Source of the DNA: Fimbriosthenelais zetlandica
Lineage: Eukaryota
Direction of reading: 5' to 3'
Length of the DNA stretch: 64,000 bases
NCBI GenBank assembly: GCA_977030845.1
Contig: OZ365118.1
Location: 19,344,001 to 19,408,000 of the forward strand
Shown: positions 2,312-62,105 of the stretch, one piece after another
How positions within the stretch are numbered: the first letter of the stretch is position 1
Layout of the letters: every line of letters begins with the position of its first letter
Position numbers and translations under genes: made by a program
The notes under the pieces: model-generated
The model's input: only the letters and a program-made list of their open reading frames with translations
Told to the model about the DNA's origin: nothing
The model's database searches: none

Positions 2312-4153
2312 TTATACACTGTGTTGCTCCTCGCTTGACTTGTTCTTGTTCTGAGTACCTCGGAGTAATTTACCGAGGTTCATGATTTTCCTGGAGAAGC
2401 TTCGCCTGACGTTTTTCTTGGGGGTTCTGGGTACCTCAAGCTGTGCTCCGGCCTTGTTCTCCTTGCTGGAGTCCAGGGAGGAGTGGGACTTGTCTGATGA
2501 GGACGCTCCACTGTCAGGGGTAGATCTACGGGAGACTCGAGCTGTACCCATACATGAGACTGTAGACTCAGGGTCAGACACGGCTCTGTTAGGGACACGT
2601 GGGAGAAAGTGTAGACGCCCTGTATCACTACCAACACAGGGGGGACGGCTGCCTAGTCCAATATTCTCAATCTCCATGAACTCCACTGACTTAGCGGTGA
2701 GGTAGATCTTGTTGGTAGCTGACTCGCTCGTCATGTTGGGTGAGTTGCTCGGGGCCATCATTCCGCCGTAGCTGGAGGTACTGGTGGCGCTGGTACACTG
2801 ACTGAGAGCACGTCGTGGAGTATTAGTCACTCTGACGGGCAGTGGGTGGCGGCTGTGGTGACGTTTAGTTGATCTGTTCTGTTTGGTGATGTTACCGTGA
2901 GGTCTAGAGGCCAGGCTGGAGGAACTGGTGGCGTCTGATTCCTTATAGGAACTCTCCACACCTGTAGATGATGTGACGTCACTGGAGGGTGGATCTGATC
3001 CATCAGACCGGGTGGGGGAGACAGACAGGCCGCTGAGGTTGTTAGACAGGGAGCTGAGGTTAGCTACAGACGCCCGGGTGGCGTTGATGGAGCAGTGAAC
3101 ATCAGCCATGGTGTGGTCAAAGAATGAGGAAGGATCCATGAGATCGGTCTCTGAGAGACCTACTGGTGATCGGTGCTCATCACTGAGGTTAGGCTGGGCT
3201 GTCTGACGTCTGAGTTTACTATCAGAGCTGTCTGAATCCACCTCATGTCTCCTGGCTACTGGCGTGGCCTGGTTAGATGAGTAGTTATCACTACCTGACA
3301 TGAAGTAGTCCTGGGAGGAGGGGTTAGGTGTGGTGGCATCATCTCCAGTAGATGTCACGGCTCCTCCATGGTACAGTCCTGAGTCCTCACTGACCAGTGG
3401 GACGCGTCCAGACACGGGGCGGGATTTGTGGACCACAATAGGTGTAGCATCAGAGTCAGTGTTAGCATAGATCACCTTAGACCTGACCTGTCTGTTGTCC
3501 ATACCGGTGGGTTTAGGTCGGGGTTCATCCATCATTAGTTTCTTGCTACATTTCTCCTTACGGTCGCTGTCCACCTCCTCGATCCTGGATATCCTCAGTT
3601 TCTTCTCGGGGGTGCTGTACTGGGGGTAGCTCATGGTACTGCTCAGTGGGCCTGGGACATCAATAATGTGAGACTGTGATACTTGCTCTCTGTATGTAAC
3701 ATTAGAGCACCGGGTGATGGAGCTGATATCCTCTACTCCAGCCTCGGCGATCTGACTCAGTCCCCCCACACGGCTGTAGGCCTCTGATGGTAGCTCAGCT
3801 GTGTCGTTAGATCCCAGGAGTGAAGCCCAGTTCTCCCTCTCTGGGGAAGCCTTGGTGTTATTGGGGCAGTGCTGGGACATGAGGGAAGAAGGGTCGGCCA
3901 TGGAGCTAGCAATGGAGCTAACCATGCTGGAGAGTTCTCTGCGGGAGTAGGGGTTCTTCCTGGTGCGACGCTCGGTGGGTCTGTGTCGCTTGTATAGAGG
4001 TTTGTGTTCAGTGTTCTGGCCGGTCACTGCCTTCACATCCATCTCAATGTTGCGCTGCTCGAAAGCCTCGAAGTTCTTGACGAGGTTATAGAAGCGTTCC
4101 TTCATCTCACGAACGTCCAGTTTGAGCATGAGATCAGCCTCAACAATGCGCAT
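2312..4153 (-). CDS. Gene A exon 2 (terminal coding exon, 613 aa) of a 744-aa Ser/Thr/Arg-rich, probably disordered protein of unknown family
   Basis: Long ORF starting exactly after the minus-strand acceptor ttttatttttctag (AG at 4155-4154). It shares several motif blocks with the ORF at 38498-41128. Confidence 0.88.
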   Translation of the reverse strand: MRIVEADLMLKLDVREMKERFYNLVKNFEAFEQRNIEMDVKAVTGQNTEHKPLYKRHRPTERRTRKNPYSRRELSSMVSSIASSMADPSSLMSQHCPNNTKASPERENWASLLGSNDTAELPSEAYSRVGGLSQIAEAGVEDISSITRCSNVTYREQVSQSHIIDVPGPLSSTMSYPQYSTPEKKLRISRIEEVDSDRKEKCSKKLMMDEPRPKPTGMDNRQVRSKVIYANTDSDATPIVVHKSRPVSGRVPLVSEDSGLYHGGAVTSTGDDATTPNPSSQDYFMSGSDNYSSNQATPVARRHEVDSDSSDSKLRRQTAQPNLSDEHRSPVGLSETDLMDPSSFFDHTMADVHCSINATRASVANLSSLSNNLSGLSVSPTRSDGSDPPSSDVTSSTGVESSYKESDATSSSSLASRPHGNITKQNRSTKRHHSRHPLPVRVTNTPRRALSQCTSATSTSSYGGMMAPSNSPNMTSESATNKIYLTAKSVEFMEIENIGLGSRPPCVGSDTGRLHFLPRVPNRAVSDPESTVSCMGTARVSRRSTPDSGASSSDKSHSSLDSSKENKAGAQLEVPRTPKKNVRRSFSRKIMNLGKLLRGTQNKNKSSEEQHSV

Positions 4154-4803
4154 CTAGAAAAATAAAATGAGAAAAACATGAGGAACTGTATGATGGACAA
4201 ACATTTATAATGGGTAAACAATCTATTTGCTTGTGAAACAAAAACCAGTCTTAACGGATTTTCCACCTTGAATTAACATCAATTCATCAGTGAACGTGTG
4301 AAAATTAACACAGATTATAGAGTATCCCTGCGACCAATCCTGGCGCTTCACTTACAATAGAAATCCAGAAAATAAACAAAAAGGCGGTCAATTATAGACT
4401 GTTTGTGTGAGGCACACAGGGCAGTAACTATAGACTAGACTCATGTATCCACTCCCTTTTGTCACTATCTTATTGTTTCCACAATTGTCTACAGAATCCC
4501 TCCAGTTGTCACATTACAAGTGGTTTAGTTTAGTGTTAAGCCACCTCTCTATAATTAACCCCGCCCTAGTTATCCTGACCATAGCTAATCTCTACTATAC
4601 AAGGTGTCATTTAACCATGGCTTAGGCCGGGGTCCCCGCCTGCCAACCTGCCCCTAATTATGCCTCCAATTTCAAAAGTGTGAAGCTATAAGTTATATAT
4701 AACTAAGCTTCCCGCCCCATGTAAATTTTCCCAGGGTTATGTGTCAATTTTGTGTAAAACTTTTTGAGATACGCAAAAGAAATCACTAGTATTGCAAATA
4801 GAT

Positions 4804-4859
4804 TGAAATTTTGACGCGTCCATTTGAAATTTTGACGCGTCCATTTGAAATTTTGACGC
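4804..4859. repeat. 21-bp tandem repeat tgaaattttgacgcgtccatt (~2.7 copies) in the gene A intron
   Basis: Directly visible. Related ttgacgcg copies occur at ~5020, 6671, 6911 and 23385. Confidence 0.85.
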
Positions 4860-5114
4860 AATGTTAAAGCTATGGCGACATCACAAGAAGTATAACATTT
4901 CTGGTATTCGCTATAATATAAATTGTTGGTAGAGTAAACCAATATGATGGAATTTCAAGTATAGTACTTGAAAGGTATGGTTTATGATTGATTTTAGACT
5001 TCCAAGTGACTGATTGAAGTTTGGACGCGAGTTCCTATGTTAAACCTATGGCGACATGTAGATGTTCTATGTCCAATACACAAGTTGATCTAAGTCCAGT
5101 AAAAGTCTACTCAC

Positions 5115-5507
5115 CATTTCGATCTTGGTATCCTTGAAGAAGTCAAATAGTTCACTATCCTGGCAGGGTACGTTAGCCTTGGTTTGGGCCATCTCCGCCC
5201 TGGAGCGGCGAGGCTTAGTTGTTGTAGATGAGGAATCACTAGAGCCATGTCCATCAGCCGAGGACCGGGAAGCCCGGTGACGGCGTGGCCGGCTGTGGTG
5301 GCGGGAGGCCCGGCGAGAGCTGGCTTCCTGAGACCGGGAAGAACCCGAGGACCGGGAGCTTCTATCACTGGGGTATTCCATGCCTGAGGGTGAAGGTCTG
5401 GTAACTGGGATATCCTCCCCCAACACACTCCTTCTCCTTCTCCTACTACTGCCAGAGTTGGCGGCAGTGCTGGTGCTAGTGGCGGTTTGCGTATCCAATA
5501 TAGGCAT
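5115..5507 (-). CDS. Gene A exon 1 (131 aa, MPILDTQ...FFKDTKIEM), Ser/Arg/His-rich
   Basis: ATG in a caacATG context and a phase-0 donor ATG|gtgagt at 5114. It joins exon 2 in frame across a 961-bp intron, and the junction peptide aligns with the gene B junction. Confidence 0.82.
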
Positions 5508-5689
5508 GTTGAATCAGTATGATATTAACATTCAAGTGGCTGTATATTACAGTTGGTAATAGAGGTAGATATGTATAGCTTGCTATGTTTGCTTGTAAGA
5601 GCGTCAGTCGAATGATACCCCTCTGAGCGGTGGAGGGGTTACATATATGGCCAGCTTAATTGCTGCCACAACACCTTACTACCAACACT

Positions 5690-5920
5690 CAGAGCCTGCT
5701 GTGATTGGCTGAGAGTGGACAAAGCTACTGCCAGCACCTTGTCCCCAGCTGTCCGCTGAATGGTCACTCAATGGTCAGTGTGAGAAACACTGTCGCCCAC
5801 TCTGCCATGCCGCATGTCTGGCTCGCCCCCACTCACACTCCGCGTTTGAGAGCTTTTTTGCACCACTGCCAGCCAATTAACCCACAATCCCCCGTATAAA
5901 CATTGGGTTTATATGATAAA
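5690..5920 (-). promoter_or_regulatory. Candidate core promoter or 5' region of gene A
   Basis: GC-richer island ~200-400 bp upstream of the ATG, with CCAAT boxes (gattggc ~5703, gccaat ~5871), a minus-strand TATA-like CATATAAA (~5914-5907) and a TGTGAGAA Su(H)-like motif near 5779. The start site is not determined. Confidence 0.35.
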
Positions 5921-8900
5921 CAAAACATGAGAGGTGAAGGCTGAGTGATAGCCTACCTACACCTGTTATCACCTGACAATGCCTACCTTGATTGATGCTA
6001 TATATCTCTATGATCAAGCGGTCATCTGGTGTCTACTCATTAATAAAGTCTACTACTGACCACTCAATCTAAAGCCAGGCTTTGATCAGTATAAAATATA
6101 GGGATGTGTTTTAAACATAACCTATAATAAGATAGCTATTTAACTGATATATCTATTTAATGTAGTAGAGAAGGCCTGGCCTATAGGTGCTTTGACCCCA
6201 ATCCCAGTGATTGCCCCTTGATTAAAATATTTACTTTACTTATTTTAAAAATAGAACACTCTCTGAATCCCCAAAACCCCAAAAGTTTAATTGAAAGTTT
6301 TTAATGATTGTTAAATATTTTGATATTGAATATGCGAGCCTGTAACGTCTAGTAAGATAGTTTTTATTTAATAATAAATGCATGACATTTGAAATATCTT
6401 TGATCAGCTTGTCCTATTATACAAATTATACACCCTTCCATCTTTAATTTGTCACTGAAGAATTATATTAAAAATAGTCACACTTGTGAGTGTGAAGATA
6501 TGAGTATTAACAAGGGTGAAGGATAGCCCGCTCACTCATCACAGACCTGAGACTTGTCTCTCACACCATGGGCTTGTAATTATTTATTGAGTGTCATATC
6601 GGACGCACATCGTTCACTGACGATTAGCACTCGATTCGCGCCTGGTCCAAAAAACATTTTAACAAATTTATTTTGACGCGTCCAACTCTTTGTGTGTATC
6701 ACTGCATTAGACCAGATGGTGTAAACGTGGTGTTATCACACGTGTTTAATATTCATCATCTTCAGACTGAACACTCACTACAAATTTCTTACATAACAAG
6801 AGCAAAATCAATTTGGTGATGTGCCGCGAAATATATCTCTGAAAAATGGAAAGTTTGGTGGATGTTTCACAAGAAATTACGCGTCATTATTTCAGATTTA
6901 ACATTATCTATTGACGCGCCTATTTTTGTTATAATCCCCGGCCCTGTAATTAATATTTCTAGCCCATTACTCGGGGGTCGGTGGAGAGTTTTACTGAGGG
7001 AAATGGCCATTAATTCCCTCTCTATGCTTTGTGTTTGATGGTCAATAGGATACACATGTCATTCTCTTACGTTTTCAGCTGAATTGAATTGAGGTTAAGC
7101 AACTACCCATTCTCTCTCACTTCCATTGTTTTATTCTTTTATGTATTTTTACCAGTTTTTGGTATCATTTTTCTGAATCAAATATTATATTTGATCAGTT
7201 CTAAATGATTCTCACATTGTCTCTTATATCATGAGTATATCTATACACCTCCACCACTCATTCTCCCCATCTCAATATTTAGTTAGCAATGATAACATGG
7301 CTTTGTCTTAATACTAAATATAACCCAGGTCATGTTAATAATAACATGAGGAAGTTTTAAGTGATGAATGTTCACATGTTAAGTACCTGGTTGAGATTAA
7401 CTCTATTACTGTCATATCCGCCCCATCCCCGGCATTGTTCACCTATAGGATTAATCTATATTGATCCACCAAAGTTAGCATAATGAGTTAGTGAGTTATA
7501 ATAACATGAGATACATGCACTGGTCGCGCCCGGCATGTCTGCCTCTCACCCCATGCATGTTGGTAGAGTAAACCTCTACATGGTCCATGTCTCAGCTATG
7601 TCCTGTCATTCCCTCAGTTAGATGTAAACCAAGCCTGCAATAGTCGGCTGTAATTCCTGTATAAACTTCCCATACTCATGGCTTGTCTGTCTGGAGGGTC
7701 TGAAGATATCATGTATGTGTCCTCAACTCAGCTGAGGAGAGAAATGCCTTAAACCAACACATGTATCATTATATATACCAATATACATCACTTTCAACAT
7801 ATCAGTTTATACCAGTTTTGCACCATATTTTTCCAGTTTGATTTTTATGCATTTTTCGCGGTTTTCTTCCCCCATCTCTTACTATGGGACATGTTTAGTT
7901 GAAGTCATAGGGAGAGAGTCTAACTGTTGGTGTGATAAGATCATGAGGTGGGTAGAGATAGCTTTGTCCACTGTAAGTCTGGGTTATGGGATGAAAGCCT
8001 GTGGTGTAACCAGCATCTGGTGAGGTTTTGTTTTGACCGGTAGACGTTTTGTCTACCTATGAGAACCTACCTGGCTGTCCGGGCTTTGATGTTCACCCCC
8101 TTGAGGCACCCTAACAGCGTGAGCCCGTGGAGGGGGCACAGATAGGTTTCATAAGTATCCTTCAACGGTGATCCCCGCTCTAGAGATTTTTAGTAAAGAA
8201 GACCTAGTAAACACTTGGTGTTTTCTGTTAGAGGACTGCAGGTTTTTAATTGATTTCCGATTTTTTCATCATTGTTTTGCACCCCTGGGAGGTAGGCTCA
8301 GCAGGGCCGACAATATATATCAAAGTGTTAAGAAACGGGGAGATTCAAAGAACATTTCTATATGTGTAAAATTGTTCCTTTCTCCCCCAAAGTACTCCCT
8401 TGTGAGTGATGCTCAAAATTGGACCTTAATTTCTTCTCTATAGATTGAAAAATACCTTTCTACTTGATAATTTTCATGCATCATCAACTTTCTATATAGA
8501 AAGAATTTTTGTCAAAACATGACAAAGGGATGATGTATTAATCGATTCTAATGTTAAGTACAAATTGATTATTAGCACATTTCTCTCAGTGAGGGCGCCA
8601 TGTTCATGATGTCATGGTGGGGGGTGGGAGATGCCGCACCTGTGACCGGGGATTTAGAGAGACTGAGTTAATACCTTTATTGTATAACGAGGTGTTGTTT
8701 TACTTCACCTCGAGGCCTCATCACAGCTGCTATGACAGATGGGGAATCACTCTCTACTTTACTCTCTCTATCATGAGTGATTGCGGGCGTGTGGAGAGTC
8801 TCTCATCTCATTCATATGGTCACTAGCATTAAAACTGACCACTGGTCAGCAGCATTAAGACTGACCGTTTGTACGCCATGCTTGGTGACATAATATTAGT

Positions 8901-9152
8901 CATTAATCAAACGTCTGGCTGAGGCGCTTTCCCACTGTCTCCCACTGTCTCAATATCTCTCTATGTCGATATACAAAATTAGAACGAGGAAGATAAAAAC
9001 ATTGTGACATTCCCCTGTACATGTCTGGGACATAGACTATGTCTAGGTGCTTTATTGATGTGAAAAAGCGCCGTTAATTCCCATCTTAATCCTCATTAAA
9101 TGTATGAAGTGTTAGGTTTTGATATATCTGTGATAATCCATGAGTTTATACC

Positions 9153-9422
9153 ATCAAAGTCGGCCAGACGCCGTCCACCCATCTCATGTGTGAAATCCGG
9201 GAGGGGGACGAGGGCACAGAGCGTCTCCACAATTTTTCAAACCACCCTTCCTTTGTAAATTTCATACAGATTAAGAAAAAAAAAGAAGAAAAAAAAGAAT
9301 CGTCTTTGATCTGGTGAAACTTGTGGCTTGTACGGTAGACTTGTCTGCGCCCCTGTCCGCGACACCAGCTTGGTTTTGTCGCGACCCGCGTCCAAGCCTG
9401 TGAGTAGCTCTTCATCTTTGAT
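9153..9422. promoter_or_regulatory. Cluster of three TCF/LEF-type CTTTGAT/ATCAAAG motifs (candidate Wnt-responsive enhancer)
   Basis: atcaaag 9153-9159 followed by tcggccagacgccgtcc, ctttgat 9304-9310, and ctttgat 9416-9422, within a locally CpG-rich segment. Confidence 0.4.
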
Positions 9423-12400
9423 GTTCAAGACATCAAAAATGACCACAGAGGGATTATCTCCTCTTAATCCGGCGCTCACAAATTTGTTTTTAATCTGTTA
9501 CAAGCGGAGACATTAGATCTGTCGGTAACACCTTGGTTCCTAAAAGAGCAAGTTTTCCTTCATCTTGTGAACTCTGGCTTTTCCAGGCCATCCGGCCTTT
9601 GGTTTAATTCAATATGAAGATCTATACTTGTCACTTGAAAGTTGTGATTACATGATTTTACACCACAGAAATAGCCGTATGTTTTACATATTGACTGATC
9701 CTTTTGAGGGGTTTTGATCTTGTAGGATTCCTCGCCCAAATTAATATTATTACATCCGCTCTATCTTCTTTGTGTTGGTCCACATGAAAGTTCTACCCCA
9801 GCTGACCCAAAACAAATTTTTGATGTGTGAATTATACACTAAAATACAAAGATCCCAGTGATGGAACTTATGTTTCTTTAAACTTTGATAACGAGTTCCT
9901 CCCTTGACAGCGACACTCTAAATGTTCACCCTCTGATCTCTAATTTAGCGCACATTTACCACATGAGTACAATACCTGGCCTGCCGTTGATACATTAACA
10001 TTTACCTCGGGCGCTTTAATGTTAATTAGAAATTAATTCATCCATCTTTGAAGCTGATCCCGTGGGACATTGCTAACTATGTTCATCCATTCTCACCCCG
10101 ACTATGAAAGTCACATCCTCTAGACATTATTGTAACTTTAAATCTATCATGAATGTTGGGAAGTGCTTCCTGCATCACTGGGGCAATTTTATCAAAAACT
10201 TGGTTAAAAACCTGCTCCCCTGCTCACTACTCCCCGTGCTCTATGCATGTCTGGCTCTCCCAGCCACATTGCAAGCCAAGTCTGTCCAGACGGTGTTTTA
10301 AAGCATCCCTGAAATAAAGCTGAATCTCATGTGATTTTAATAAGTTTGATGCTAAACATGCAAGATTTAACATGAAGAGAGTCCCGCTAAGGTAGTTATA
10401 GGTATGAATGAGTGGGGAGGGAGGGAGAGGCGGACACAGGCTAGCCATGTTATGTGAGCAGTTATACCCGCCAGTGTCCATCTCCTCCACCCATCTGCCT
10501 GTCTGCTTCACTGTCTGAAGACAGGATTTACTAACCATTCACCAACTAAAAGTGTCAATGGTTTGTCTGAAGGGAAACAGTTAAAACCTATTGATCTTAT
10601 TCATACACAGATTCAAGCCAATCAATTCTCTAATAAAACCGTTGTAGGGATGTAAGTTTGTTAGTAATTTTATTTATCTTTGGGTTCTTTATATGTTTTG
10701 TCCCTCCTTGAGCTTATATTTAGTCCAGTATTAACACATTTATCCCAGGTATTAATGGTTCATATGGACTTCAGTTATATGAAGTCTTCCCATTCATTGT
10801 AACAGTCCATATCTTAAGACATAGGTAAACCATAAACAATATACAATAAAACAAATTAATTCAAGGAAAACACATGAAAGAACACAACTGTAAATGGAGA
10901 CAATTAGGCACCTAAAGGACAAACTAGACAACTTTAAAGATATTTTCTTCCACAACTGTCACACCCTCACACCTTAGACAGCACGATACCTGTCTCAAGT
11001 ATTAATTAGCACATCCTGCCTTTCCTCTGAACCTTTCCTTTAATACCCATAACGTTAAAAAGTAACCCTAACCACCTTCTAGATCTGTCCTGGGAAAATA
11101 TCCTTCTCTCTAACTTTCCAGGTGTGAACATCTCATTCTAATATAAACATAAACCCAGACATACCTAACATGCAATGACAGAAACTCCATGAAACTTGTT
11201 TGTTTTACTTTTCTCAGCACAAACCCTTCCCATACCCTCATCCATTGTTCCTACCCACTTCAAAGTTCCCTCCTCATCCCTCCTATCCAACTGTCTGGCT
11301 TCCCAGGGGAATCCACTTGTCTGGTTGGAAAAACGGTTCATCCATCACATATAAATTATTGTTGATTCTAAGCTTTATTTACAATTAAGATGAGACCATA
11401 GCATCATAACCATCTAAGGGGTTGTGTGTTTATGTTTATTATTATCAATTACCAGTAAAATTGGACAGTTTTGAAGGTATTGTCTCTGGTAGAAGGACCT
11501 CTGTTTTCATTAATTGTTGATTTATTGTCTGATTCTGATTGATTGGTTTCTCACTGATTTGTGGGTGATTGTCATATCGTTAGTTGTACCATTGAGAAAT
11601 AATCTGTTATCTCTTTGATTTATTAAAAAGTACTGTTCATTTCCCCTTGATTTTTACTGCATATTCATATAATTTCATCATTTTTGAATCAGCAGATTCA
11701 TTCATAAATTTCTTGTGAAGAATTAGTTTTCTGTGATGTCCGAGATTAAGAATAATCCAAAGATTTAGAAAGGACTATGGAATACTAATTTTGCCAAACA
11801 TCAGAAGATCTGACAAAGTTCTTGAATGTTTAATAAGATTTTGTCGGACCAGCGGTGAGGAAAAGATACCTGGATGTTTGATCTTAGCAGGGATCCATAT
11901 TTCTTTTGTAAATAACTAAAGAGTAATAACCATGTTTGTAAATAGATAATAAATGCTGTAAAAGTACAATAGGAGACTAGGTGTGTGAGTAATCTCCAGG
12001 TCGTCCTACCTAGTATTATCATGTCTGGTGTTGAGATTTAACTATAATCCCTATCACTTGTACCATCCCTCACCATTGTCTCTCACACACCTCCATTCAC
12101 CTGTTAAATACCTGCTTTATGTATTAACTATCTCCCATACTGACCACTATACTGACCACTATACTGACCCCTCCTGGGTCGTGTGGCTCCCCCTGGGGGT
12201 CCTAGACAGCCCCAGACAGCCCCCACTGTCTGTGATGTCTGTCGAGGGGATTTACTCATCTTACCATGTTTTAACACCAAAAGCCAACTTACCCTGGTGT
12301 TAGGGCAGGACGACCTACTGCTCTATCCCCAAACTTATACCATTAATGGCTTAATCACGGATAATCTTGTATAGAAAGGTCCAATATTAAAGCAAGGAAA

Positions 12401-12815
12401 GCTCCAGGGTGGGGCACTATCATAGGTTTAGGTGATTAAACGTAGACACAACAGAGATGGTCTCTGGCCATTTAATTGCAATCAGGGATTGTTTTGGGTG
12501 AAGTCTGTACACATGGTGTTTTCTTCACAGTCCGAGAATCCTTAACTTGAAACAATGCTTTGTGTATTGGAGGTACAAGGTGTTGTCAGAGGGCGTTGTG
12601 GGCTAAGATTATGTCGTTGGTTTGTTGGTCCTGCCTTTGAACCTTTTTCATTCACGTAGAGATCTGTTTAGAAAACATATTAAACTTGTGTTTGGATGAG
12701 ATGTCTTTATGGTAGATACGGTGATTACTTTTCTGGTGTATTTCAGGTCGTTTTTCCCTGAAGATATCTTGATGTTTTGACTCAGTAATTTAATTATAAT
12801 TTTCTTGTTTTTCAG

Positions 12816-12954
12816 GAAGAGGAGATAGAGTGGCTAGGACTGAGTTTGGTCGAGGCTGAGAGAAAGCAAATCCACGAGGAGCGACGGAAAGAGTTTGAGA
12901 GCAAACGTCCGCTGAAAGAGGCCTACCTGGCCGACCTCATACAAGATCTCAAAG
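12816..12954 (+). CDS. MRPL28: MRPL28 coding exon (EEEIEWLGLSLVEAERKQIHEERRKEFESKRPLKEAYLADLIQDLK), phase 0/1
   Basis: tttttcag acceptor and G|gtgagt donor. Similar to human EEEAEWVGLTLEEAIEKQ...PLFKIYVAELIQQL. The ORF track missed it because it has no start codon. Confidence 0.9.
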
Positions 12955-13154
12955 GTGAGTCTTACCCCAAGATGCTAGTGTTTTATTACTGTCTTTAGAT
13001 ATATTTATGAAATAATTAATTACAATGGGATAATTATCTATCGTAGATATTAACCTTTATTTTTGATATATTATATTTAGTATAAATAGTACATGTACCC
13101 ATTTAAATAACTTTGGTAATTCTAATTCACTTTTGTCCCTCTCTATTTTTTCAG

Positions 13155-13182
13155 TGAAGGGAATAAACGAGACGGAAGAAAC
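13155..13182 (+). CDS. MRPL28: MRPL28 28-nt micro-exon (VKGINETEET), phase 1/2
   Basis: Flanked by ctctattttttcag and gtaagt. The phases fit both neighbouring exons. Confidence 0.7.
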
Positions 13183-13364
13183 GTAAGTTATTTGAAAGCT
13201 TGTTAATAATTTAGCTTCATAAGAAACATACTCTTGGAAAGTATGAAACACCTTTTTTCCCTTGGGTTCTTATCCTGTTACTTTTAAGGATAAGACTTAG
13301 TACCTTTAAGCAATGTTTGAGATGATTTTTGACCGGTCTGTAGTCCTATATTTCCATATTTCAG

Positions 13365-38497: not shown

Positions 38498-41128
38498 TTA
38501 GAAATGCCCCAGTGTATGTATGTGTAAATTACCAGTACTCTTATAGAAATTACTGCTAAATTGTTTAATTTTCTTTACGAGTTGTTTTTTACGGTCGTGT
38601 TGGAGGTTGCGTGCGACCGCTGAGTGTTGGACGACTGTTCTTGTATTACCAGCATTGTCCTGGAGCTGGATATGGTGACCAGGGTCGGTTTTCCTGCCAG
38701 ATCCTGGGGTGGAGAAACCAGAGTCATAATCATGAGCGTATCGTAGACACTTCCTCACTGATCGCCCTTCAGACCGGGTCTCTAGCAGCTCCTGTGAGCT
38801 GTGGCTGGCAGCCTGGGGTGGAGCATGTTTACCCACAGTACAGGGAGGTCTGATACCCAGATTCCTCCTCCGTGGTGGAGGATTCTGATACCGAGGTGGA
38901 AGACTCACTGGTGGACCCATGATCTCAAACTTGGGTACATCGACATAGTCATAAGTGTCAGTGGTGGGTCGGCTGGAACCAGAGTCTGTGACATTAGGGG
39001 AGTTGACAGGGACTGGTAGATCTCGTGACTCGGTGCTCTCAGGACTAGTATTGTCAGTAGTACTGGTGGTGGTGGTACTGGTGGATACTGACAGGGGGCG
39101 TTGTTTGAGGGAATGGCGGTCTGAGCTGACAATGGTGTCATCCAGGCTGTTGGGGCTCCAGAAGCCGTCAGACTCCTTCATGGACGTCTCCAGCGCCATC
39201 TGGGAGGCGTGGAGAGTGTCCTCTGAGATGTCAGCTTCAGGATCATCAGCTTCTGATGTGGTGGTAGAGAGGGCGCTGAGATCAGGAAGGGACGAGCGAG
39301 TCGCTTCTAACGACAAATGTTTCCTGGTGATGTCCAGCCTGGTGGCATCAAGCCTGGTGACATCCAGGAAGTCGGACTCTGACAGACCAATAGGGTCTCT
39401 CAGCTGAGTCTTGTCCAGCACTGTCTGACCGGTCTGACGTTTGAGCATGCGCATACGACCGTTCCTGGCATCATACGTGGCAGTGTAGTCCTCAGCTCGA
39501 GCGTTGGCTGTACTGAAGTGACTGCTGTCATCCATACATTCTGACAGGTATGAACTATCATTGTCTGTCTCAGTGACAGCGGTCGAGCTCCTGGGCCTGA
39601 TCTCTCCCTCACTCTCAGTGCTCGATTCACTGATGGAGAATGAATCGTCTGTTTGGAAGATGCACGGTCCACCAAATGTAGGATGGAGGCCGTGTTCCTT
39701 ACACAGCTTGGGTTCCTTGTGGGATGTTGGTGTTAACTGAGCCTCACGTTCCTTCTGCTTCAGTCGTTCACGTCGACGCGTACGTGCACTACGGCTACGT
39801 GATCGACGTGACTGAGCGCTGGCTGTGAGATCTGTGGTTTGTACAGAGTTAGGCTTCTGTAATGATCTGATATCTACAATGCTATCATCTAGAGATCGTG
39901 GAGTCTTCTTGATTGAAGACGGCGTCAGGACTTTCTTCCTGATGACAGCGCTGGGTTCAGAGATGGTGGTCCGCGCGTCAGATAAACACTTAAAGTCAGG
40001 TTCATTAAACGTGACGTCAGGAGAGTGGAGGGCGTCATCACGGGACATGTTGAGGGTACTGTGGAGGGGGTAGTTGAGGGTACTATGTAGGGGGTAGTTA
40101 AAGGTACTGTGTAGATTACCACTGATGTTACTACCCGATGACTGCTCACGTAAACTACTGTGAGATACATTGTTACTAATTTGACTAACATCTTTAAGAT
40201 TACTCAGTGATCTAGATGTGTAGAGTTCACTTATAGCGTCACTCGTGGCGTATTTGACTGGGCTCTCTCTCCGCCGTACAGGCTGCTTGTTCATTACATT
40301 ACCTCCCATGTTCTCCTTGTTGGAGGAATCAAGGTGAACTGATAACCGTGGACAGTGAGGCCCCAGGTTATCAATACTGTTGATCCATATAGATGTTTGA
40401 TCATTCTTATTGACAGTGTCACTGACTGATGTCCTCTTAGAGCCATACAAGGCACTACTGGGGGTAGAGTTGACATCCATATAGTTCTCATCAACCTCCA
40501 TGGAGACCACACCTTCCTGGGACGGTGATCTGAGCATGACATACTCCCCCTCTAACTCACTCATGGTGGGGGACGTGGTGCCCGTGTTGAAACCAGAGCT
40601 GGTACTGAACTGATGTTTGCACATCTTGGTTCTCTCCTCCTGTATGGGGGTCAGCAGCTGACTAGGTGTGGTGCGGGGGTGGCAGGCACAGCGGCGGTGT
40701 GGCTTACAGAATGGTGTGGATGTTTTATGTTTACCATCACTATATTTCTGATCACTGTCCAGTACTCTCCTCTCACCACCACCCTGGAGTCGATGTAATC
40801 CAGCGTTCTCCTTGTCCTCCTCGGGTACCCGGGCGCTGGCCGCTCGTCGGAGCGACCTCCTGGGTGTGGATCCAGATCCTCCAGGTGTACTGGATCCCAG
40901 GGACCGCCGTGACTGTATGCGGGCACGCCGGGCGTCGTACAGCGCCCTCACGCGGGCTCGCGGCAGGGACGCCACCTTGTCTGTGAGCGGTACGCCTGTA
41001 GACGCCTTCATTGGCGTCACGCTTGGCTGACTCTGGTAACTCTCAAAGTTCTCCAGCAGTGAGAGAAACTGCTGCTTGATGTTCTTCAGTTCCAGCTTCA
41101 TGTGTAGGCCTTCCTCTATAATCTCCAA
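38498..41128 (-). CDS. Gene B exon 2 (terminal coding exon, 876 aa), paralog of gene A exon 2
   Basis: The 896-aa ORF has its true start after the acceptor cttgttatttttcag (AG at 41130-41129), beginning LEIIEEGLHMKLEL. It shares motif blocks with gene A. Confidence 0.9.
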   Translation of the reverse strand: MEIIEEGLHMKLELKNIKQQFLSLLENFESYQSQPSVTPMKASTGVPLTDKVASLPRARVRALYDARRARIQSRRSLGSSTPGGSGSTPRRSLRRAASARVPEEDKENAGLHRLQGGGERRVLDSDQKYSDGKHKTSTPFCKPHRRCACHPRTTPSQLLTPIQEERTKMCKHQFSTSSGFNTGTTSPTMSELEGEYVMLRSPSQEGVVSMEVDENYMDVNSTPSSALYGSKRTSVSDTVNKNDQTSIWINSIDNLGPHCPRLSVHLDSSNKENMGGNVMNKQPVRRRESPVKYATSDAISELYTSRSLSNLKDVSQISNNVSHSSLREQSSGSNISGNLHSTFNYPLHSTLNYPLHSTLNMSRDDALHSPDVTFNEPDFKCLSDARTTISEPSAVIRKKVLTPSSIKKTPRSLDDSIVDIRSLQKPNSVQTTDLTASAQSRRSRSRSARTRRRERLKQKEREAQLTPTSHKEPKLCKEHGLHPTFGGPCIFQTDDSFSISESSTESEGEIRPRSSTAVTETDNDSSYLSECMDDSSHFSTANARAEDYTATYDARNGRMRMLKRQTGQTVLDKTQLRDPIGLSESDFLDVTRLDATRLDITRKHLSLEATRSSLPDLSALSTTTSEADDPEADISEDTLHASQMALETSMKESDGFWSPNSLDDTIVSSDRHSLKQRPLSVSTSTTTTSTTDNTSPESTESRDLPVPVNSPNVTDSGSSRPTTDTYDYVDVPKFEIMGPPVSLPPRYQNPPPRRRNLGIRPPCTVGKHAPPQAASHSSQELLETRSEGRSVRKCLRYAHDYDSGFSTPGSGRKTDPGHHIQLQDNAGNTRTVVQHSAVARNLQHDRKKQLVKKIKQFSSNFYKSTGNLHIHTLGHF

Positions 41129-52821: not shown

Positions 52822-52847
52822 AGGGCCTGAAAGGGCCTGAAAGGGCC
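52822..52847. repeat. 10-bp tandem repeat agggcctgaa x2.6
   Basis: Directly visible. Confidence 0.75.
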
Positions 52848-55800: not shown

Positions 55801-58800
55801 TCCCCTCCCCCCGGGTCAAAAATCGACACCAGTAGGGGAGGGCAGGAATTGTCACAGAGAACATCCCAGTAAATGCACCTGTTCTGGAATTCTTGGTCTG
55901 CTTTTTGGGGGATATTTTAGAATTGATCGATCGTTTACACCTGATTCACAAGCTGCTGCGTTGCTTTGGTCAAAAAGAGGAGGAGTTGCTACACGCCCCG
56001 GCCCGGGGGAGTGCGGGGTATTATGTATTGGTGGCGTAAGCTTGTGTACAACCCACGGAGGCATTGCCCGGGCGGACGTAACGTGATATGAATATACGTG
56101 CGTCCACCTGGCGGAACCCCCGCTCATCACTCATACACACACACCTGTCACGTGACAAACCAAACTAACCAAAGCGAGGCTCGCCAAGGAGGTGGATCTG
56201 GCCAATAATGATTGATGAGGCTTACAAGCACCTGTCCGTCTACCCCAACAAAAGATCAGCTTGATGGCACAAAAAAGGTGCGAGGAAACAAGAGAGAAAA
56301 GTGGGGAACTGTCAGGGGGAGGAGGATTAGAGGTACGTTATGACATGACATGGCCAGGTTGATGGGACATTGCTAAGAGACAGGTACATGCATTCTACAC
56401 ATACATGTAGAACTCCTGCCAGAATGAGATGTCTCTATTTATCTAACTCAATCATGAGCAGAGAGAGAAGACAATCCATTCACTGAACATGTCACTCATA
56501 CCAAAATACAGGAGAAAGACATCATCAGTCATAATCTAAACCACCAGTTAGGTCGTAGGCATTAATATGAAAAGCGAAGAGATAAAATGACTCAAATTTA
56601 GAAAAAATAGGGGCGTATGTTCCTATGCTATACCGTATGAACCATATCAGATGAAAGGAAACTATTTCCTTCCAGTTAGATATAAAAGTTTAAATCCATG
56701 GCTATGTATTGGTTTATATGAATCTATATTAGGTTCCACCAATTTTCCCCTCATCTCATTTTAAAGCAGGCATTGCTCGGGGGCTGAGCATGATACATGG
56801 ATGGTGAATGGTGAAGTTAAGTCAGGCTTGTTAGCAGAACAATACTGGAGTAGGAGACTATAGTAATGTATATCTGTCCGTGTGTAAGCTCGGTCCCCGC
56901 CCGCTCCCCCAGCCCCCGGGCTGTCTCATAGGGTGGCTATATATACCAGTATTTAACATGGCACCCTTTATACCTGTATCTCTACCTCGATTGTATAAAG
57001 ACCATGGATTAGAACGCTCAGGTAATGCTCGTCTTTTCAAAGGGAACCATGAAGGGTGTGGGTTTCTAGCATGTCATTTTGTATACATTATTGTAACCAC
57101 TAAACTATCGCTTTCTGATAAGTGACGGTTTCTTAATACAAAGTACTATGCAGAATTTATCATTACATTTAGTGTTTATTTCTAGGAATTTATTGCAAAA
57201 GATCTGTTAGATCCCAAAGTCTTTTACTGAAATTCAAATGTCAGAATGTGACATATAAGGGAACATGGGAAGTTCCCTGAAGGAGGGTTGACTGGGGGTA
57301 CATGTATAACCGATCCTGGGGACAAGCGAGTGACAGATGTTTTCACACGCGACATGTGTGTTAGCTTGAATCATTCAAAATGTTCAGCCCAGGCTCAGAT
57401 CCCATCTTCCTGTTCAAATTCTTAACGTATTCTCAGATCCCTCACTATTTTATTATTCCAGGACATGCCTGTGTTACCCGAGTACACAATGTATATACCA
57501 GCAAGGTAAAAACTGAATACAACATTGGTCGCATGTTAATTAAGGGATTTTACTTTCAGAATGTCAAATGACATCATGTATAGATCAATTAAGTTTTATA
57601 TGTAAGTTGTTTTCGTTTTCATTTCAGAACTTGATTTAAGATTTTCTGTACTTGACATGATTATTTGTCAATAGTCCCTTGTTGTGTTACCCACCTTCAC
57701 CCCGTGTCGGGGGATGGTAGGATAGAAATCACGAGGTGTGAAGCGAACCCACTTTCTAAAACATGCTTATCAACCGTCGGTAGTTCATCAATAGGATTAT
57801 AGATCAGATTGGACCGTTTCCCAGGTATACAAATCTCAAAACGTGCCAGTAAAAGAGGGGGCAGACGTGCGCGGGACCTCAGTGGTACCCAGTATTACAT
57901 AACCAGCTGCCTCCCCCCGTGCCATAAAGGTGTTTTGTTAGAAGATAAATATTATCTGTGCCCTCTCCCGCTCCCTGCACCTGCCACACTGCGCGGCACA
58001 GATAGAAAAACCTGCGGATCCATGGAAACACCTGTCTCTGTTCCCATGGAAACGCATGATCAGCATGGGTGAACACCTTTGGGAGTTAACTGAAAATGGT
58101 GGCTTGGTCGTTTGGTTGGCCATTGGCCTCCATGAGATAGGAATGTGAGAGGAGGGTAAAGATGGGGTCGTTGGGTGTTCAGTTCCAGTCAACTGACATG
58201 CTCAGATGAATGTTTCAAACACTGACTCCATGCACTGTGTGACTATGAGGTTTATATTAAAGTGAAGGTCTATACTATGGTCTCAAGTAACACTTTTAGG
58301 GAGAGTCCCTCCGAGGAAGGATGGGTATTTCATGACAAAATGAATGGAGTTTTCTTTGCAATAACTTCATAAAAGTCCCATGAATGGCTGGTGTATTCTT
58401 GCCTCGTGGGAATTTGTCTCAATTTAAAGGAGTAATTGCATTTAAAGTGAGAGTTTGGGGTGAGATGGTGGGTTGAGGGACGTGCTGACCGTGAGAGGGT
58501 AGGGGTGAATCTCAAGTGTCCATTTGTATGGTCAGTAATCAATTTAGTTACCATGGTCCCCGCTAGGGTGATCCGAGGCCTACTTGATCTCACCCAGGTG
58601 TTCCTCCTTCAACAAGTCACCCCAGTTAAAGTGACCTCCCCATGAGAGCAACCTTTTCTCTTCCCCCTGTGAACCCTGCTCAAAAAGGACCTTTTTCTAA
58701 GGCCAAGGCTGGACTTAGGGCAGGCCTTAAGTCTAAAGGCAAACAATTGTTACCGAGCCTACTCACCCGACCATCTCGCTATAGGAGCCCTTGTTTACCT

Positions 58801-61786
58801 ATAATGTATTTTTCTCTCAGGGCCAGGCCAGCAATGTTTGCAAACCTATTGAGTATCAATATGCCGTCAAGATCAAACAGCTTTTTCATCAAAGTCACAA
58901 TTGACGTAATTAATTTCTCACAAGCCGCGTCATTCATATACATTATATAGAGTCCTCTATATCCCTGGATGACCAACTATATCCCTATACCCCACTCAAT
59001 AAAAAACCGGCATCTCAACACAACAAACTCACAAAAAACGTGATACGGGAGAATAAGAAAACATCCCTTATTCCCAGACTAATTGAAACATCAAAAAGTC
59101 TCTCATTTCCTCGCGCTTTGTTGGAGAAAATAAACAACTTTGAGGCGTATTGTAGGCCTAATCCCCCACTGACACCCATGGGAATATAAACCCTTATTTT
59201 GGCTGGGTTAATCTTTTTTCAGGCTCTTTGCTCCCTCTATGCCCATGTCCCCTACCTTCACTGAAGGTTCAGTGGTGCGTGAAATCATAGACCAGCACCC
59301 AAACATGCCTGGTCACTGGGCCATGGAAGGCCGACACAGTGGTGACACCTAGCAACAGACCCGGTAACCTTGCGGCAAAATACTGAAGGTGTCGCCACTG
59401 AGACTTTTCTGCATCTCTAATGCCAGAAAAACTCACGAGGTGGCGCCAGGGTAGGCATGATGTTGCAAAACCACACGACCTAAAAATCACTGACAAAACC
59501 ATGATCTAGAAAATTACATTACAGATTAATATCTCATGTAATTTGCTTGCATTATGATGGCTAATTATGACCAAAAAATCATGGGAGAACGATATAGATA
59601 AAACAATAAAGGAATCGATATAGGCTTGTGTAGACTATATAGGAAATATTCTACTATATAGAAAACATGAAAATACATGTAAAGAACTATTAGTTCAGTA
59701 CACATATTTAGAAAATACTGCTGTTGGCAAAGATTATTTGTTGAGTACACATATTTTGTCTTTACCATATGATAATTATGAGTGGTCACAGATGGTGGTT
59801 GGTCTACCAGCATCATCTGTCCTTTACATATTTACCACTTCACACTAACATGACATTTCATCCTATCTCTACCTCACACCCCATGCTACATGCCCACGTC
59901 CATGTGGCACATCCATTCTCTACCCACCACACAGATAAAGGGAGCGTGACATGGGAGATAAAGGTGCGGGGGTAGGGTGTGAAGGGTTGACCAGGGATGG
60001 TGGTGGGTGGGTGTGTAGGTGTCCACACAGGGTGTGCATGGTCGACCGTCACGCATCACTACCATTACCATCACCCAGTGACCATCAGTCATATCACACC
60101 TGGAATAACACCCATTGTCACAATGCTCTTCTAAAAAAAATACACACTATTTATCATTTTCTTGTCGTAACCCAATTTTTATCATTGTTAACAAATGCCT
60201 GAGATCTATGAATATTCTTTCCAGACTTATAATAAATTGTTTGGGAAAATAAGTTTCATTATTATATATATGTAGACAGTTTATTGAGACTTATAATTGA
60301 AATTTGGAACATTGTAGAAAGGTTATGGTAGGCAGGGTCAAGCTGTTAGCTTGAGTATAAACATATTGGCGATATGTCCATGGTTTGAGTGATCATGTAT
60401 TAATCTATTATGATTATCATGACCATGTATATGATGATTGATTGTACATTATGATTGATTGTATATTATGATTGATGTCCATGTATGATGTATCTCCGCG
60501 TGTGAGTGTTTATATATGTGTATATAAGTATAATAGGTGAGTTATACATACATCTGGTCACCCGTCCCCTCCCACACATCTCATATTATCCCCTATACGA
60601 TGACCATACCACACCCCGCCCATAGGTCATCCTAATACTCCACACCCCCCAACGTGTGATAAATACATCACCTTGACCACTGAGTGGACATGACAGAAAT
60701 TTAACCCTCACATGACCAGAGAACACCCAGTATTAACCATTGTCAGGCCTGTAGATAAGGGGGTTAATACCCATCCCCCTGCCCCTTGCATGTCATGGTT
60801 GCATGTGATGCTGACATTTCAGCGTCTGTAAAAAAGACGCCATTAACTCAGCACCGAGGGGGGGGGGGGGGGGGGTTGCCAGCCATGGTGGAGCAGATGG
60901 CACCAGAAACAAAAAAAAATACAGGAAATCACAGAGACAGTTTAATCAAGCGAGAAATAGATCAAAAACCTCTGAGTTCTCTATGAGATGTAGGTGAACT
61001 ATGGGGCTGTAAAGGGCCAGGGATGGTATATATATATAGATGCTATATTAGATGGGGTCTCCAGTGGTGTAGGCTAATTATGGACGGCCCACTCCCACGC
61101 GCCCAGGGTGGCGAGTTTACTTAGCAGTTTTTGTTCAGCGACATTCTACACGTCCACCATTTTTCATTTCCTGTTCACTAATCCGCCATTATTGATACTG
61201 TCTCTCCCACCATTGTGGATGTTCACCGTGCCCCAGCAGCAGAAATGGTGTCAAGGTATAAAAGCGACACACTGCTCTGTCCTATATCAAATGACAAGAC
61301 TTCCTCCTAATTCTTACTGAAAACGCAAGCTACCATAGCCTGCTATATATAGCAGACACTGAATACAATCAAATGGCACATATATACTATATTTCACTGC
61401 TCTTTTTGTACCCCTCCTATACTGCCAAAGATATTCCCACGCAATTTTAAAGCTGCCACATTTAAGAAACTAATATCTGTCAGATATATGAGACATTGCC
61501 TCACCCATTTTAAATACATGCATATATGAACTAACCTAAATCCCATAAAATATGCACAAATTAAAAGGTCATATATATATGGCATAAAACAATCGTTATT
61601 GTTAAACCATATTACATAAGGAGGGGAATGGGCACCCCCTTTGACCTCAAAAGAAAGATCTTTAAAAACCTTTTGACGTTTGTCAAATGATATTAAATAA
61701 AAAAGAATGTGAATATCATGTGATATTCCACTGAACTATGGCCCTCATAAAGAGACTGACCATTACATAAAGCTACATGTACTCAC

Positions 61787-62105
61787 CATATTTTGCTTGG
61801 TGTCCAGATACATGCTGGCTATCTCTGTCTTGTCCACCCTACTGTTGCCTGTGGCAGGGCTGGCAGTCTCGCCCATCTCGCTCCGTGATCTCGTGTGATG
61901 ACGTTTAGGCGTCCGTTGATCGTTACCATGGAGACCAGCGTCCTGGTTGCTATGGTTACTGCGGTGTGTGTGACGTGAGGTAGAGGATCGGTGACTGTGT
62001 CGTGAGTGACTGCTGTGACTGGACCGTCCGTGACTGCTACTCTGACTACATACGTCATCCATGCTGTCCTCCAGCCCCCGGGAGCCTAGGCCCCCACTCA
62101 CGCCC
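61787..62105 (-). CDS. Gene B upstream coding exon (His/Ser/Arg-rich; probable start ATG at 62062, MDDVCSQ...YLDTKQNM, 92 aa)
   Basis: Acceptor tctttttctctccactag (AG at 62107-62106), ATG in a gacagcATGg context, and donor gtgagt at 61786. RSRSEM and DTK..M match gene A exon 1. The frame is open back to the acceptor, so a further upstream coding exon is possible. Confidence 0.78.

What the first reader, a model, noticed from the sequence alone, without database searches (positions are those of the whole stretch)
2312..62105. Tandem pair of diverged paralogs (A 744 aa, B >=968 aa) defining an unrecognised motif-scaffold protein family
Seen: after splicing, the two minus-strand genes share collinear islands in otherwise unalignable Ser-rich sequence. 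These are RSRAEM / RSRSEM; ELFDFFKDTKIEM|MRIVEADLMLKLDVREMKERFYNLVKNFEAFEQ versus EIASMYLDTKQNM|LEIIEEGLHMKLELKNIKQQFLSLLENFESYQS; the RQT..PxGLSExD..ATRxS..LS block; GLGSRPPCVG / NLGIRPPCTVG; and a basic amphipathic C-terminal helix (RKIMNLGKLLR / KKIKQFSSNFYK). Inference: islands retained after such deep divergence are probably binding modules of a disordered regulatory scaffold. I cannot match them to a family I know (I considered Dact, Naked, AMER, Emi1/2, Bora and Bearded). The ORF track splits both genes, so automated annotation would likely label them low-complexity or uncharacterised.
Basis: partly seen in the sequence, partly recalled or inferred. Interest (0 to 1): 0.8.

Follow-up and report, generated by a model that had tools for sequence, protein, structure and literature searches.

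The report
Unnamed annelid scaffold-protein gene pair
Two neighbouring genes encode floppy, serine-rich proteins of a so far unnamed family, named only from bristle worms here; their best-kept stretches resemble docking sites for cell-division enzymes, which suggests, but does not prove, a role as cell-cycle scaffolds.

Summary
Gene A (744 aa) and gene B (at least 968-982 aa) are real minus-strand genes with canonical phase-0 splice sites. Their last exons are significantly similar (BLASTP E 4e-11 and 1e-7; profile-profile E 7.8e-29). They are the only two family members in this genome.

Relatives exist: 80 cluster representatives by HMM, 27 below 1e-30. The few that carry names are all annelid proteins labelled hypothetical or given only a locus tag (Capitella, Paralvinella, Dimorphilus). 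There is no match in Pfam, in PDB sequences or to the Dapper HMM.

A-type and B-type split on a branch with 100% support. The order B then A on one strand recurs in another assembly, so the duplication is old. AlphaFold2 gives near-total disorder apart from an N-terminal helix and a C-terminal helix.

The most invariant island is a tandem P-L-H-S-T unit. It shares six of eight residues with the PBIP1 peptide crystallised on the PLK1 polo-box. A-type carries S-T-P-x-K there. B-type alone also keeps D-KEN, L-[ST]-P-I-x-E, DSG-x-x-[ST] and a -TLGHF end.

Best reading, inferred and not shown: phospho-regulated scaffolds that dock Polo-like kinase. A distant Dact relationship is not excluded. No RNA run was listed, so splicing rests on comparison between species.

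The parts
5115..5507 (-). Gene A, first coding exon (131 aa; Ser/Arg-rich; ends RSRAEM..ELFDFFKDTKIEM; donor gtgagt at 5114)
   Evidence: the conserved exon end in ortholog locus L001
2312..4153 (-). Gene A, last exon (613 aa plus stop at 2312-2314)
   Evidence: ortholog P0001, 60% identity, E 6e-193
4022..4153 (-). A: N-terminal amphipathic helix MRIVEADLMLKLDVREMKERFYNLVKNFEAFEQ..
   Evidence: AF2 helix 2-44, pLDDT above 90 over the first 30 residues; aligns with the B helix at E 1e-7
3593..3649 (-). A: family core island PLSSTMSYPQYSTPEK, two polo-box-type S-[ST] units, the second with a CDK-type T-P-x-K
   Evidence: S-T-P-x-[KR] found in 12 of 15 A-type sequences
3047..3214 (-). A: LRRQTAQ..PVGLSETDL..INATRASVANLSSL block shared with B
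2933..2953 (-). A: SSYKESD, the most invariant A-type island
2624..2746 (-). A: NSPNMT and LGSRPPCVG islands
2366..2401 (-). A: C-terminal basic helix (SFSRKIMNLGKL)
   Evidence: AF2 helix 585-596
61787..62104 (-). Gene B, upstream coding exon (106 codons; His/Ser/Arg-rich; RSRSEM..EIASMYLDTKQNM; donor gtgagt). True start unresolved
   Evidence: homologous exon ends
38498..41128 (-). Gene B, last exon (876 aa plus stop), reached across a 20.6-kb intron
   Evidence: (HMM E 2.8e-234)
41033..41128 (-). B: N-terminal helix LEIIEEGLHMKLELKNIKQQFLSLLENFESYQ
   Evidence: AF2 helix 2-32, pLDDT 85-95
40898..40966 (-). B-type only: basic helix ..RARVRALYDARRARIQSRR
   Evidence: AF2 helix 55-77; conserved island
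40805..40813 (-). B-type only: D-KEN box
   Evidence: KEN present in 22 of 25 B-type and 1 of 15 A-type sequences; collinear position
40637..40654 (-). B-type only: LTPIQE(E), matching the PP2A-B56 LxxIxE pattern
   Evidence: L[STE]PI.E present in 18 of 25 B-type and 0 of 15 A-type sequences
40058..40192 (-). B: family core island DVSQIS..SLREQSS..LHSTFNYPLHSTLNYPLHS (three LHST units)
   Evidence: P346, L347, S349 and T350 are among the 12 columns at least 90% invariant; compared with FDPPLHSpTA of PBIP1
39656..39706 (-). B-type only: LCKEHGLHPTFGGPCIF (C-x2-H-x2-H-x6-C)
   Evidence: AF2 small hairpin, pLDDT 67-70
39266..39568 (-). B: TDNDSSYLSECMDD, RMLKRQTGQ, PIGLSESDF and LEATRSSLPDLSALS islands
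38831..39013 (-). B: VPVNSPNVTDS..YDYVDVP and NLGIRPPCTVG islands
38708..38725 (-). B: DSGFST, matching the beta-TrCP degron pattern DSG-x-x-[ST]
   Evidence: DSG.{2,3}[ST] present in 24 of 25 B-type sequences; conserved island
38501..38674 (-). B-type only: C-terminal module, a hairpin (..NTRTVVQHSAV..), the helix DRKKQLVKKIKQFSSNFYK and the free end ..HTLGHF
   Evidence: AF2 strands 819-833 and helix 844-864, pLDDT 80-87; the end [LF][GA]x[FLVI] is present in 25 of 25 B-type and 0 of 15 A-type sequences

Best explanation
Shown. A and B are intact, spliced, anciently duplicated paralogs of a protein family that carries no name or Pfam model, and whose named members are all annelid. Both proteins are almost wholly disordered. 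Each has an N-terminal amphipathic helix, a string of short conserved islands and a C-terminal basic helix. Inferred. They act as phosphorylation-controlled scaffolds built from short linear motifs, and their shared core function is to dock Polo-like kinase. The family-defining island is a tandem [F/L]-x-Y-P-L-H-S-T unit, which is of the polo-box ligand type. In A-type it is followed by S-T-P-x-K, a CDK-primed polo-box site. The terminal helices would place the scaffold on a partner or structure that is still unknown. B-type keeps extra control modules that A-type lacks. These are a D-KEN box (APC/C degron), L-[ST]-P-I-x-E-E (PP2A-B56 docking), DSG-hydrophobic-x-[ST] (a Polo-primed SCF-betaTrCP degron type) and a free -TLGHF end. 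This predicts that B is an unstable, cell-cycle-gated hub, and that A is a stripped-down version that keeps the kinase docking but not the turnover and phosphatase modules.
For: Genes and paralogy. Family size and absence of annotation. The two subfamilies split on a branch with 100% SH-aLRT support, and each holds many species. The order B then A on one strand about 28 kb apart recurs on ERZ21781341 ctg63945l. A-type and B-type genes share one contig in ERZ26052378. Intron position is conserved. Disorder plus terminal helices. Motifs: P, L, S and T of the PLxST unit are among the very few columns at least 90% invariant in 36 B-type sequences. The P[LQ]xS[TS] pattern occurs in 23 of 25 B-type and 15 of 15 A-type sequences, and S-T-P-x-[KR] in 12 of 15 A-type sequences. 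B's FNYPLHST matches the PBIP1 peptide FDPPLHSpTA (PDB 3P37) at F(-7), P(-4), L(-3), H(-2), S(-1) and T(0); in that structure F71 fills the polo-box Tyr pocket and pT78 is required for binding (PMC6828814). KEN (22 of 25), L[STE]PIxE (18 of 25), the DSG degron pattern (24 of 25) and the C-terminal end (25 of 25) are collinear islands in B-type and are essentially absent from A-type. That these patterns are the KEN box, LxxIxE, DSGxxS/T and the polo-box consensus S-[pS/pT]-[P/x] rests on established knowledge of those motif classes.
Against: No experiment, no expression data and no phosphorylation data exist for any member. Short motifs are degenerate, and with about 20 islands some matches to known motif classes are expected by chance. 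My rough estimate is that a 6-of-8 match to some well-known peptide is not very improbable once all islands and all remembered peptides are counted. Several strongly conserved islands have no candidate partner (RRQTGQ, ATRxSLPDL, VPVNSPNxTD, RPPCIG, SSYKESD). B-type also keeps YDYV and YVxL, which are tyrosine motifs pointing to a different kind of signalling. A homodimer prediction for the N-terminal region gave no verdict.
Confidence: 0.42

Rival explanations
1. The family is a disordered scaffold of some other pathway, such as cortical, cytoskeletal or tyrosine-kinase signalling or transcription, and the cell-cycle motif matches are coincidental. The conserved islands bind partners that cannot be guessed from sequence.
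For: Most invariant islands match no known motif class. YDYV, which is Nck-SH2-like pYDxV by established knowledge, is kept in 17 of 25 B-type sequences. Motif classes are degenerate.
Against: Four independent conserved islands all point to mitotic control. The polo-box-type unit is the most invariant part of the protein in both subfamilies.
Confidence: 0.3
2. The family is a very distant homolog, or a functional analogue, of Dact/Dapper. The N-terminal helix would correspond to the Dact leucine-zipper region. The B-type free end, hydrophobic-G-x-F, would bind the Dishevelled PDZ domain, which tolerates Gly at -2. That tolerance is from my own knowledge of Daple's GCV end and of phage-display ligands ending GWF, and was not verified here.
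For: The architecture is similar: small 5' exons, one huge last exon, an N-terminal helix, a Ser-rich body and a C-terminal basic helix close to the free end. Dact motif strings taken from PMC4236578 land on collinear positions of the B-type HMM. Motif 2c falls at positions 7-11, 4b at 263-272, 11d at 380-383 and 11g at 637-652. For 11g, 0, 7 and 19 of 500 shuffles reached the observed score; for 4b, 9 of 500 did.
Against: All bit scores are 3.3 or lower. The Pfam Dapper HMM hits neither gene, nor any of 36 relatives at E up to 10, nor the locus in a whole-genome scan. The HMM search from this family did not visibly retrieve any Dact (none of the hits scanned carries the Dapper domain). The -MTTV end is absent. 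The published survey found no Dact outside chordates.
Confidence: 0.1
3. The genes are decaying or mis-modelled open frames without function.
For: No RNA evidence could be obtained.
Against: The open frames of 613 and 876 codons are intact. Orthologs show 60-91% identity. Islands are conserved across deep annelid divergences, splice sites are conserved and gene order is conserved.
Confidence: 0.02

Closest known systems
PBIP1 / CENP-U polo-box docking site (FDPPLHSpTA, PDB 3P37)
   Same: B's repeated FNYPLHST and LNYPLHST share F(-7), P(-4), L, H, S and T with the crystallised ligand. This includes the residue that fills the Tyr pocket.
   Different: The resemblance covers one 8-residue motif only. 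There is no CENP-U domain, the motif is tandemly repeated, and the helix sits at the N-terminus rather than the C-terminus. This is convergence, not homology.
Polo-gated unstable regulators (Emi1/Emi2, Bora, Claspin, Wee1)
   Same: B-type has the same motif grammar: a polo-box docking site plus a DSGxx[ST] degron. It also has KEN and, like Emi2 and BubR1, an LxxIxE B56 site. This comparison rests on established knowledge of those proteins.
   Different: There is no F-box, zinc-binding region, Bora domain or kinase domain. No Pfam match was found. The comparison is about how it may work, not about membership.
Dact / Dapper (Pfam PF15268)
   Same: Both are disordered Ser-rich adaptors with an N-terminal helix, a large last exon and a basic helix next to a functional free C-terminus. 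There are loose collinear motif echoes.
   Different: There is no HMM match in either direction. The end is -TLGHF in B, or has no tail motif in A, instead of -MTTV. Motifs 1, 2d-f, 5 and 11b have no counterpart.
Annelid hypothetical proteins CAPTEDRAFT_207223 (Capitella teleta), LSH36_12g11012 (Paralvinella palmiformis), DgyrCDS12014 and DgyrCDS3369 (Dimorphilus gyrociliatus)
   Same: These are true family members with the same islands in the same order and the same -TLGHF type end.
   Different: None is characterised. A search of the paper library for three of these identifiers found nothing.

Membership tests
Unnamed annelid family (CAPTEDRAFT_207223-like) | Significant full-length HMM match to other members | tested here: met
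   Hits range from E 4e-245 to 1e-30 for 27 representatives. The own-genome scan finds only A and B.
Unnamed annelid family (CAPTEDRAFT_207223-like) | Collinear islands: N-terminal helix, D.S.IS..REQ, PLxST units, [KR]RQT, GLSE[ST]D, ATRxS, NSPNxT, C-terminal basic helix | tested here: met
Unnamed annelid family (CAPTEDRAFT_207223-like) | Phase-0 intron immediately before the N-terminal helix | tested here: met
   Seen in A, B, L001 and P0028.
Dact / Dapper | Match to the Pfam Dapper HMM (PF15268) | tested here: not met
   No hit for A or B at E up to 1. No hit for 36 relatives at E up to 10. In the whole-genome scan the only match (E 0.87) is an unrelated coiled coil on another contig.
Dact / Dapper | C-terminal PDZ-binding motif -(L/V)MTTV | tested here: not met
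   B ends -HTLGHF and A ends -EEQHSV.
Dact / Dapper | Conserved motifs 2c, 4b, 11d and 11g in order | tested here: inconclusive
   Placement is collinear, but scores are 3.3 bits or lower. The best controls were 0 to 19 of 500 shuffles for 11g.
Dact / Dapper | Binding to the Dishevelled PDZ domain | not testable with these tools
   The genome's Dishevelled PDZ domain is split over exons, so no unaltered chain could be handed to the complex predictor.
Emi1/Emi2 (FBXO5/FBXO43) | F-box and IBR-type zinc-binding region | tested here: not met
   No Pfam hit.
Bora | Bora N-terminal domain | tested here: not met
   No Pfam hit.
Shugoshin | Shugoshin_N coiled coil and Shugoshin_C basic motif | tested here: not met
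   No Pfam hit at E up to 10 in 36 members.
KRAP / ITPRID | KRAP_IP3R_bind domain (PF14722) | tested here: not met
   The family appears only as a low-score Atlas neighbour (0.75-0.80). No Pfam hit.
Polo-box ligands (a functional class, not a family) | S-[S/T] core with Pro/hydrophobic at -4/-3, His/Gln/Thr/Met at -2, conserved across orthologs | tested here: met
   This is a pattern match only; phosphorylation and binding were not tested.

The most novel reading that the evidence does not exclude
A-type and B-type are the missing non-chordate relatives of Dact/Dapper. The B-type free end, hydrophobic-G-x-F, would be the ancestral ligand of the Dishevelled PDZ domain. That would overturn the published view that Dact genes are chordate-specific and would give spiralians a Dact-like node in Wnt/planar-polarity signalling.
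Probability: 0.1. Interest if true: 0.6.

Novelty: new member of a known kind. Interest (0 to 1): 0.4.

Why it matters
Annelid genomes hold a conserved, syntenic pair of large disordered proteins that no database names. If the motif reading is right, they form a lineage-specific hub linking Polo kinase, PP2A-B56, APC/C and SCF-betaTrCP. The paralog pair would then be a natural dissection: A keeps the kinase docking and has lost the turnover and phosphatase modules. That would be a tractable case of how motif-only proteins evolve after duplication, and it would offer a new handle on spiralian cell-division control. If the motif reading is wrong, this is one more orphan disordered family, useful mainly for annotation.

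Tried and rejected
- **Pfam:** scans of A, B and 56 relatives found nothing relevant.
- **PDB:** a sequence-profile search returned 0 hits at E up to 10.
- **ESM Atlas:** three searches gave best scores of 0.75-0.86, all below the level that counts. KRAP_IP3R_bind recurs as a neighbour at low score and is not supported by Pfam.
- **Dapper HMM against the whole genome:** the only hit was a spurious coiled coil.
- **Word-indexed protein searches:** the searches with whole A and with the A1 profile were swamped by low-complexity words and gave only 5 hits. Restricting the words to the core island fixed this.
- **Cluster name look-ups:** 30 proteins checked; the only names were 'hypothetical protein' and a Dimorphilus locus tag.
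- **RNA evidence:** no sequencing run was listed for either gene, so read laying could not be used.
- **Complex prediction:** two copies of B residues 1-80 gave no verdict (score 0.02). This is neither support nor evidence against.
- **Dishevelled PDZ test:** I planned to test the B tail against this genome's Dishevelled PDZ domain. I dropped it because the domain is split over exons.
- **Fold searches:** not run, because the models are below pLDDT 50 over most of their length.
- **Literature:** a search for three of the named annelid locus tags found nothing.
Full report
**What is there**

The window is animal DNA: C37:19344001-19408000 of a 447-Mb assembly in 79 contigs.

- **Gene A.** A 131-codon exon (5115-5507) ends ..DTKIEM and is followed by gtgagt. 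After a 961-bp intron, tttttctag precedes a 613-codon last exon (2312-4153).
- **Gene B.** A 106-codon exon (61787-62104) ends ..DTKQNM and is followed by gtgagt. After a 20.6-kb intron, ttttcag precedes an 876-codon last exon (38498-41128).
- **Shared features.** Both introns are phase 0 and lie immediately before the N-terminal helix.
- **Start of B.** This is unresolved. Candidates are an acceptor-like site at 62105 and in-frame ATGs at 62128 and about 62062. That gives 968 to 982 or more residues.

**Is the similarity real?**

Yes.
- BLASTP of the last exons gives E 4e-11 for the RRQT-to-RPPC block and E 1e-7 for the helix.
- The upstream exons alone are not significant. However, their ends (FFKDTKIEM and MYLDTKQNM) recur in orthologs.
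- Profiles of the two subfamilies match at E 7.8e-29.
- An HMM scan of the whole genome finds only these two genes.

**Support for the gene models**

No RNA run was listed for either gene, so the evidence comes from comparison between species.
- In the locus of an A ortholog (P0002, about 42-50% identical), an exon about 900 bp upstream ends ..LFMDTKIEM followed by gtaagt. The last exon starts after ccag at ATGCGT...
- The deposited Paralvinella palmiformis model P0028 joins ..EAKTNM to LKIIEQ.. at residue 54/55, across a 5.7-kb intron.
- The Capitella and Dimorphilus models read straight through the same junction.

**The family**

- **Size.** A profile search of 1.84 billion cluster representatives gives 80 hits at E up to 1e-3, and 27 below 1e-30.
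- **Names.** Nearly all hits come from unannotated assemblies. The only names found are 'hypothetical protein CAPTEDRAFT_207223' (Capitella teleta), 'hypothetical protein LSH36_12g11012' (Paralvinella palmiformis), and DgyrCDS12014 and DgyrCDS3369 (Dimorphilus gyrociliatus). All are annelids. GCA_025642065 is cited in a paper on deep-sea polychaete genomes.
- **No known family.** There is no Pfam family, no PDB relative and no convincing Atlas neighbour.

**Two old subfamilies in a conserved arrangement**

- A maximum-likelihood tree of 40 sequences separates A-type (15) from B-type (25) on a branch with 100% SH-aLRT support. A-type branches are longer.
- On ERZ21781341 ctg63945l, a B-type gene lies at 202.9-205.2 kb and an A-type gene at 233.4-235.3 kb. 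They are on the same strand with B upstream, which is the order in the window.
- A-type and B-type genes also share one contig in ERZ26052378.
One 3.70-Mb contig holds four members.
- The duplication therefore predates the divergence of these annelids.

**Structure**

AlphaFold2 with the family alignments gives a mean pLDDT of 47-50.
- **A:** a helix at residues 2-44 (pLDDT above 90 over the first 30 residues) and a weak C-terminal helix at 585-596. Everything else is disordered.
- **B:** helix 2-32 and a second basic helix at 55-77. There is a small hairpin at the CKEHGLHP..GGPCIF island. The C-terminal module, a hairpin plus helix 844-864, has pLDDT 80-87.

**The islands**

Column statistics are, and counts.
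- **Shared by both types:** the N-terminal helix, D.S.IS..S.REQ.S, the PLxST units, [KR]RQT[GA]Q, P.GLSE[ST]D, ATR.S..LS, KESD, NSPN.T and the C-terminal basic helix.
- **B-type only:**
  - the RARVRALY helix
  - D-KEN (22 of 25)
  - L[STE]PI.E (18 of 25)
  - YV.L
  - LCKEHGLHP..GGPCIF
  - DCDSSYLSEC.DD
  - YDYV (17 of 25)
  - DSG-x-x-[ST] (24 of 25)
  - the free end ..TLGHF (a [LF][GA]x[FLVI] end in 25 of 25)
- **A-type:** it lacks the B-only modules. It keeps RPPCIG (13 of 15) and has S-T-P-x-[KR] after the second PLxST unit (12 of 15).
- **Most invariant residues in 36 B-type proteins:** P, L, S and T of the PLHST unit, S and I of D.S.IS, and K, F, L and F of the C-terminal module.

**How it most likely works (inference)**

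- **Polo-box ligand.** The PLHST unit has the form of a polo-box ligand. B's FNYPLHST matches PBIP1's FDPPLHSpTA at six of eight positions. One of these is the Phe that fills the polo-box Tyr pocket in PDB 3P37 (PMC6828814). A's ..YPQYSTPEK is a CDK-consensus T-P-x-K inside S-T-P, the classical primed polo-box site (established knowledge).
- **B-type motif set.** D-KEN, LxxIxE-type and DSGxx[ST] motifs form the grammar known from Polo-gated, unstable mitotic regulators such as Emi1/2, Bora, Claspin and BubR1 (established knowledge).
- **Proposal.** I propose a Polo-kinase docking scaffold anchored by its terminal helices. B would be additionally phosphatase-bound and degradable. A would be a reduced paralog.
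- **Limits.** This is a pattern-level argument. Motif classes are degenerate, several strong islands have no candidate partner, and nothing was measured. I put it at about 0.4.

**Dact**

- **Against.** The Dapper HMM finds nothing in A, B, 36 relatives or the locus. The search from this family did not visibly retrieve any Dact.
- **For, weakly.** I scored the published Dact motif strings (PMC4236578) against the B-type HMM. Motifs 2c, 4b, 11d and 11g fall in the right order. Motif 11g lands on the C-terminal basic helix, with 0 to 19 of 500 shuffles reaching its score.
- **Weight.** All scores are 3.3 bits or lower. The -MTTV end is absent.
- **Verdict.** This is a lead, not a finding. I give it about 0.1.

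**Verdict**

- This is a real, previously unnamed family of motif-only proteins. Its named members are annelid, and it is represented here by its two ancient paralogs.
- Its function is unknown experimentally. The sequence gives a specific, testable Polo/B56/degron hypothesis.
- Interest is moderate. Orphan disordered families are common, but this one has unusually legible islands and a built-in paralog contrast.

Noticed in passing
G000:C37:19342905-19343015 (+), about 1 kb before the window start; window 1-13000: A Ribosomal_L28 (MRPL28-type) exon lies just upstream of the window on the plus strand (E 1.1e-5). The downstream MRPL28 exons inside the window were not mapped.
   Followed up: partly
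window about 4805-4900 and 5040-5075 (gene A intron): The intron holds a short tandem repeat of a unit of about 21 bp (gcgtcaaaatttcaaatggac, nearly 3 copies). It also holds a second copy of a segment of about 25 bp, tgtcgccatag.tttaacat. This is probably a small repeat element.
   Followed up: no
window 39656-39706 (-): The B-type-only island LCKEHGLHPxxGGPCIF has C-x2-H-x2-H-x6-C spacing and a predicted hairpin (pLDDT 67-70). It could be a minimal zinc knuckle or a rigid binding epitope.
   Followed up: no
window 38933-39013 (-): YDYV, kept in 17 of 25 B-type proteins, fits the Nck-SH2 pYDxV pattern. The upstream G.YV.L.P islands are also tyrosine-centred. This hints at tyrosine-kinase input that the cell-cycle reading does not explain.
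   Followed up: no
relatives P0032, P0058, P0065 and P0112 (contig of 3,697,033 bp); P0028 and P0029 (Paralvinella contig JAODUP010000012.1): Some annelids have expanded the family locally. One contig holds four members, and Paralvinella has two B-type genes on one contig.
   Followed up: partly
G000:C25:17290000-17304700 (-); L004, L005, L007: This is the genome's Dishevelled gene. The second half of its PDZ domain is a separate exon (L007 4171-4323).
   Followed up: partly
P0035 (TARA ocean metagenome scaffold), P0047, P0069: These are short, Arg/Cys-rich family members (216-467 aa) ending -KIKTLGVF. They keep KEN, the PLHST repeats, RRQTGQ and the tail, but little else. They look like a minimal version of the B-type protein from unidentified plankton.
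   Followed up: no
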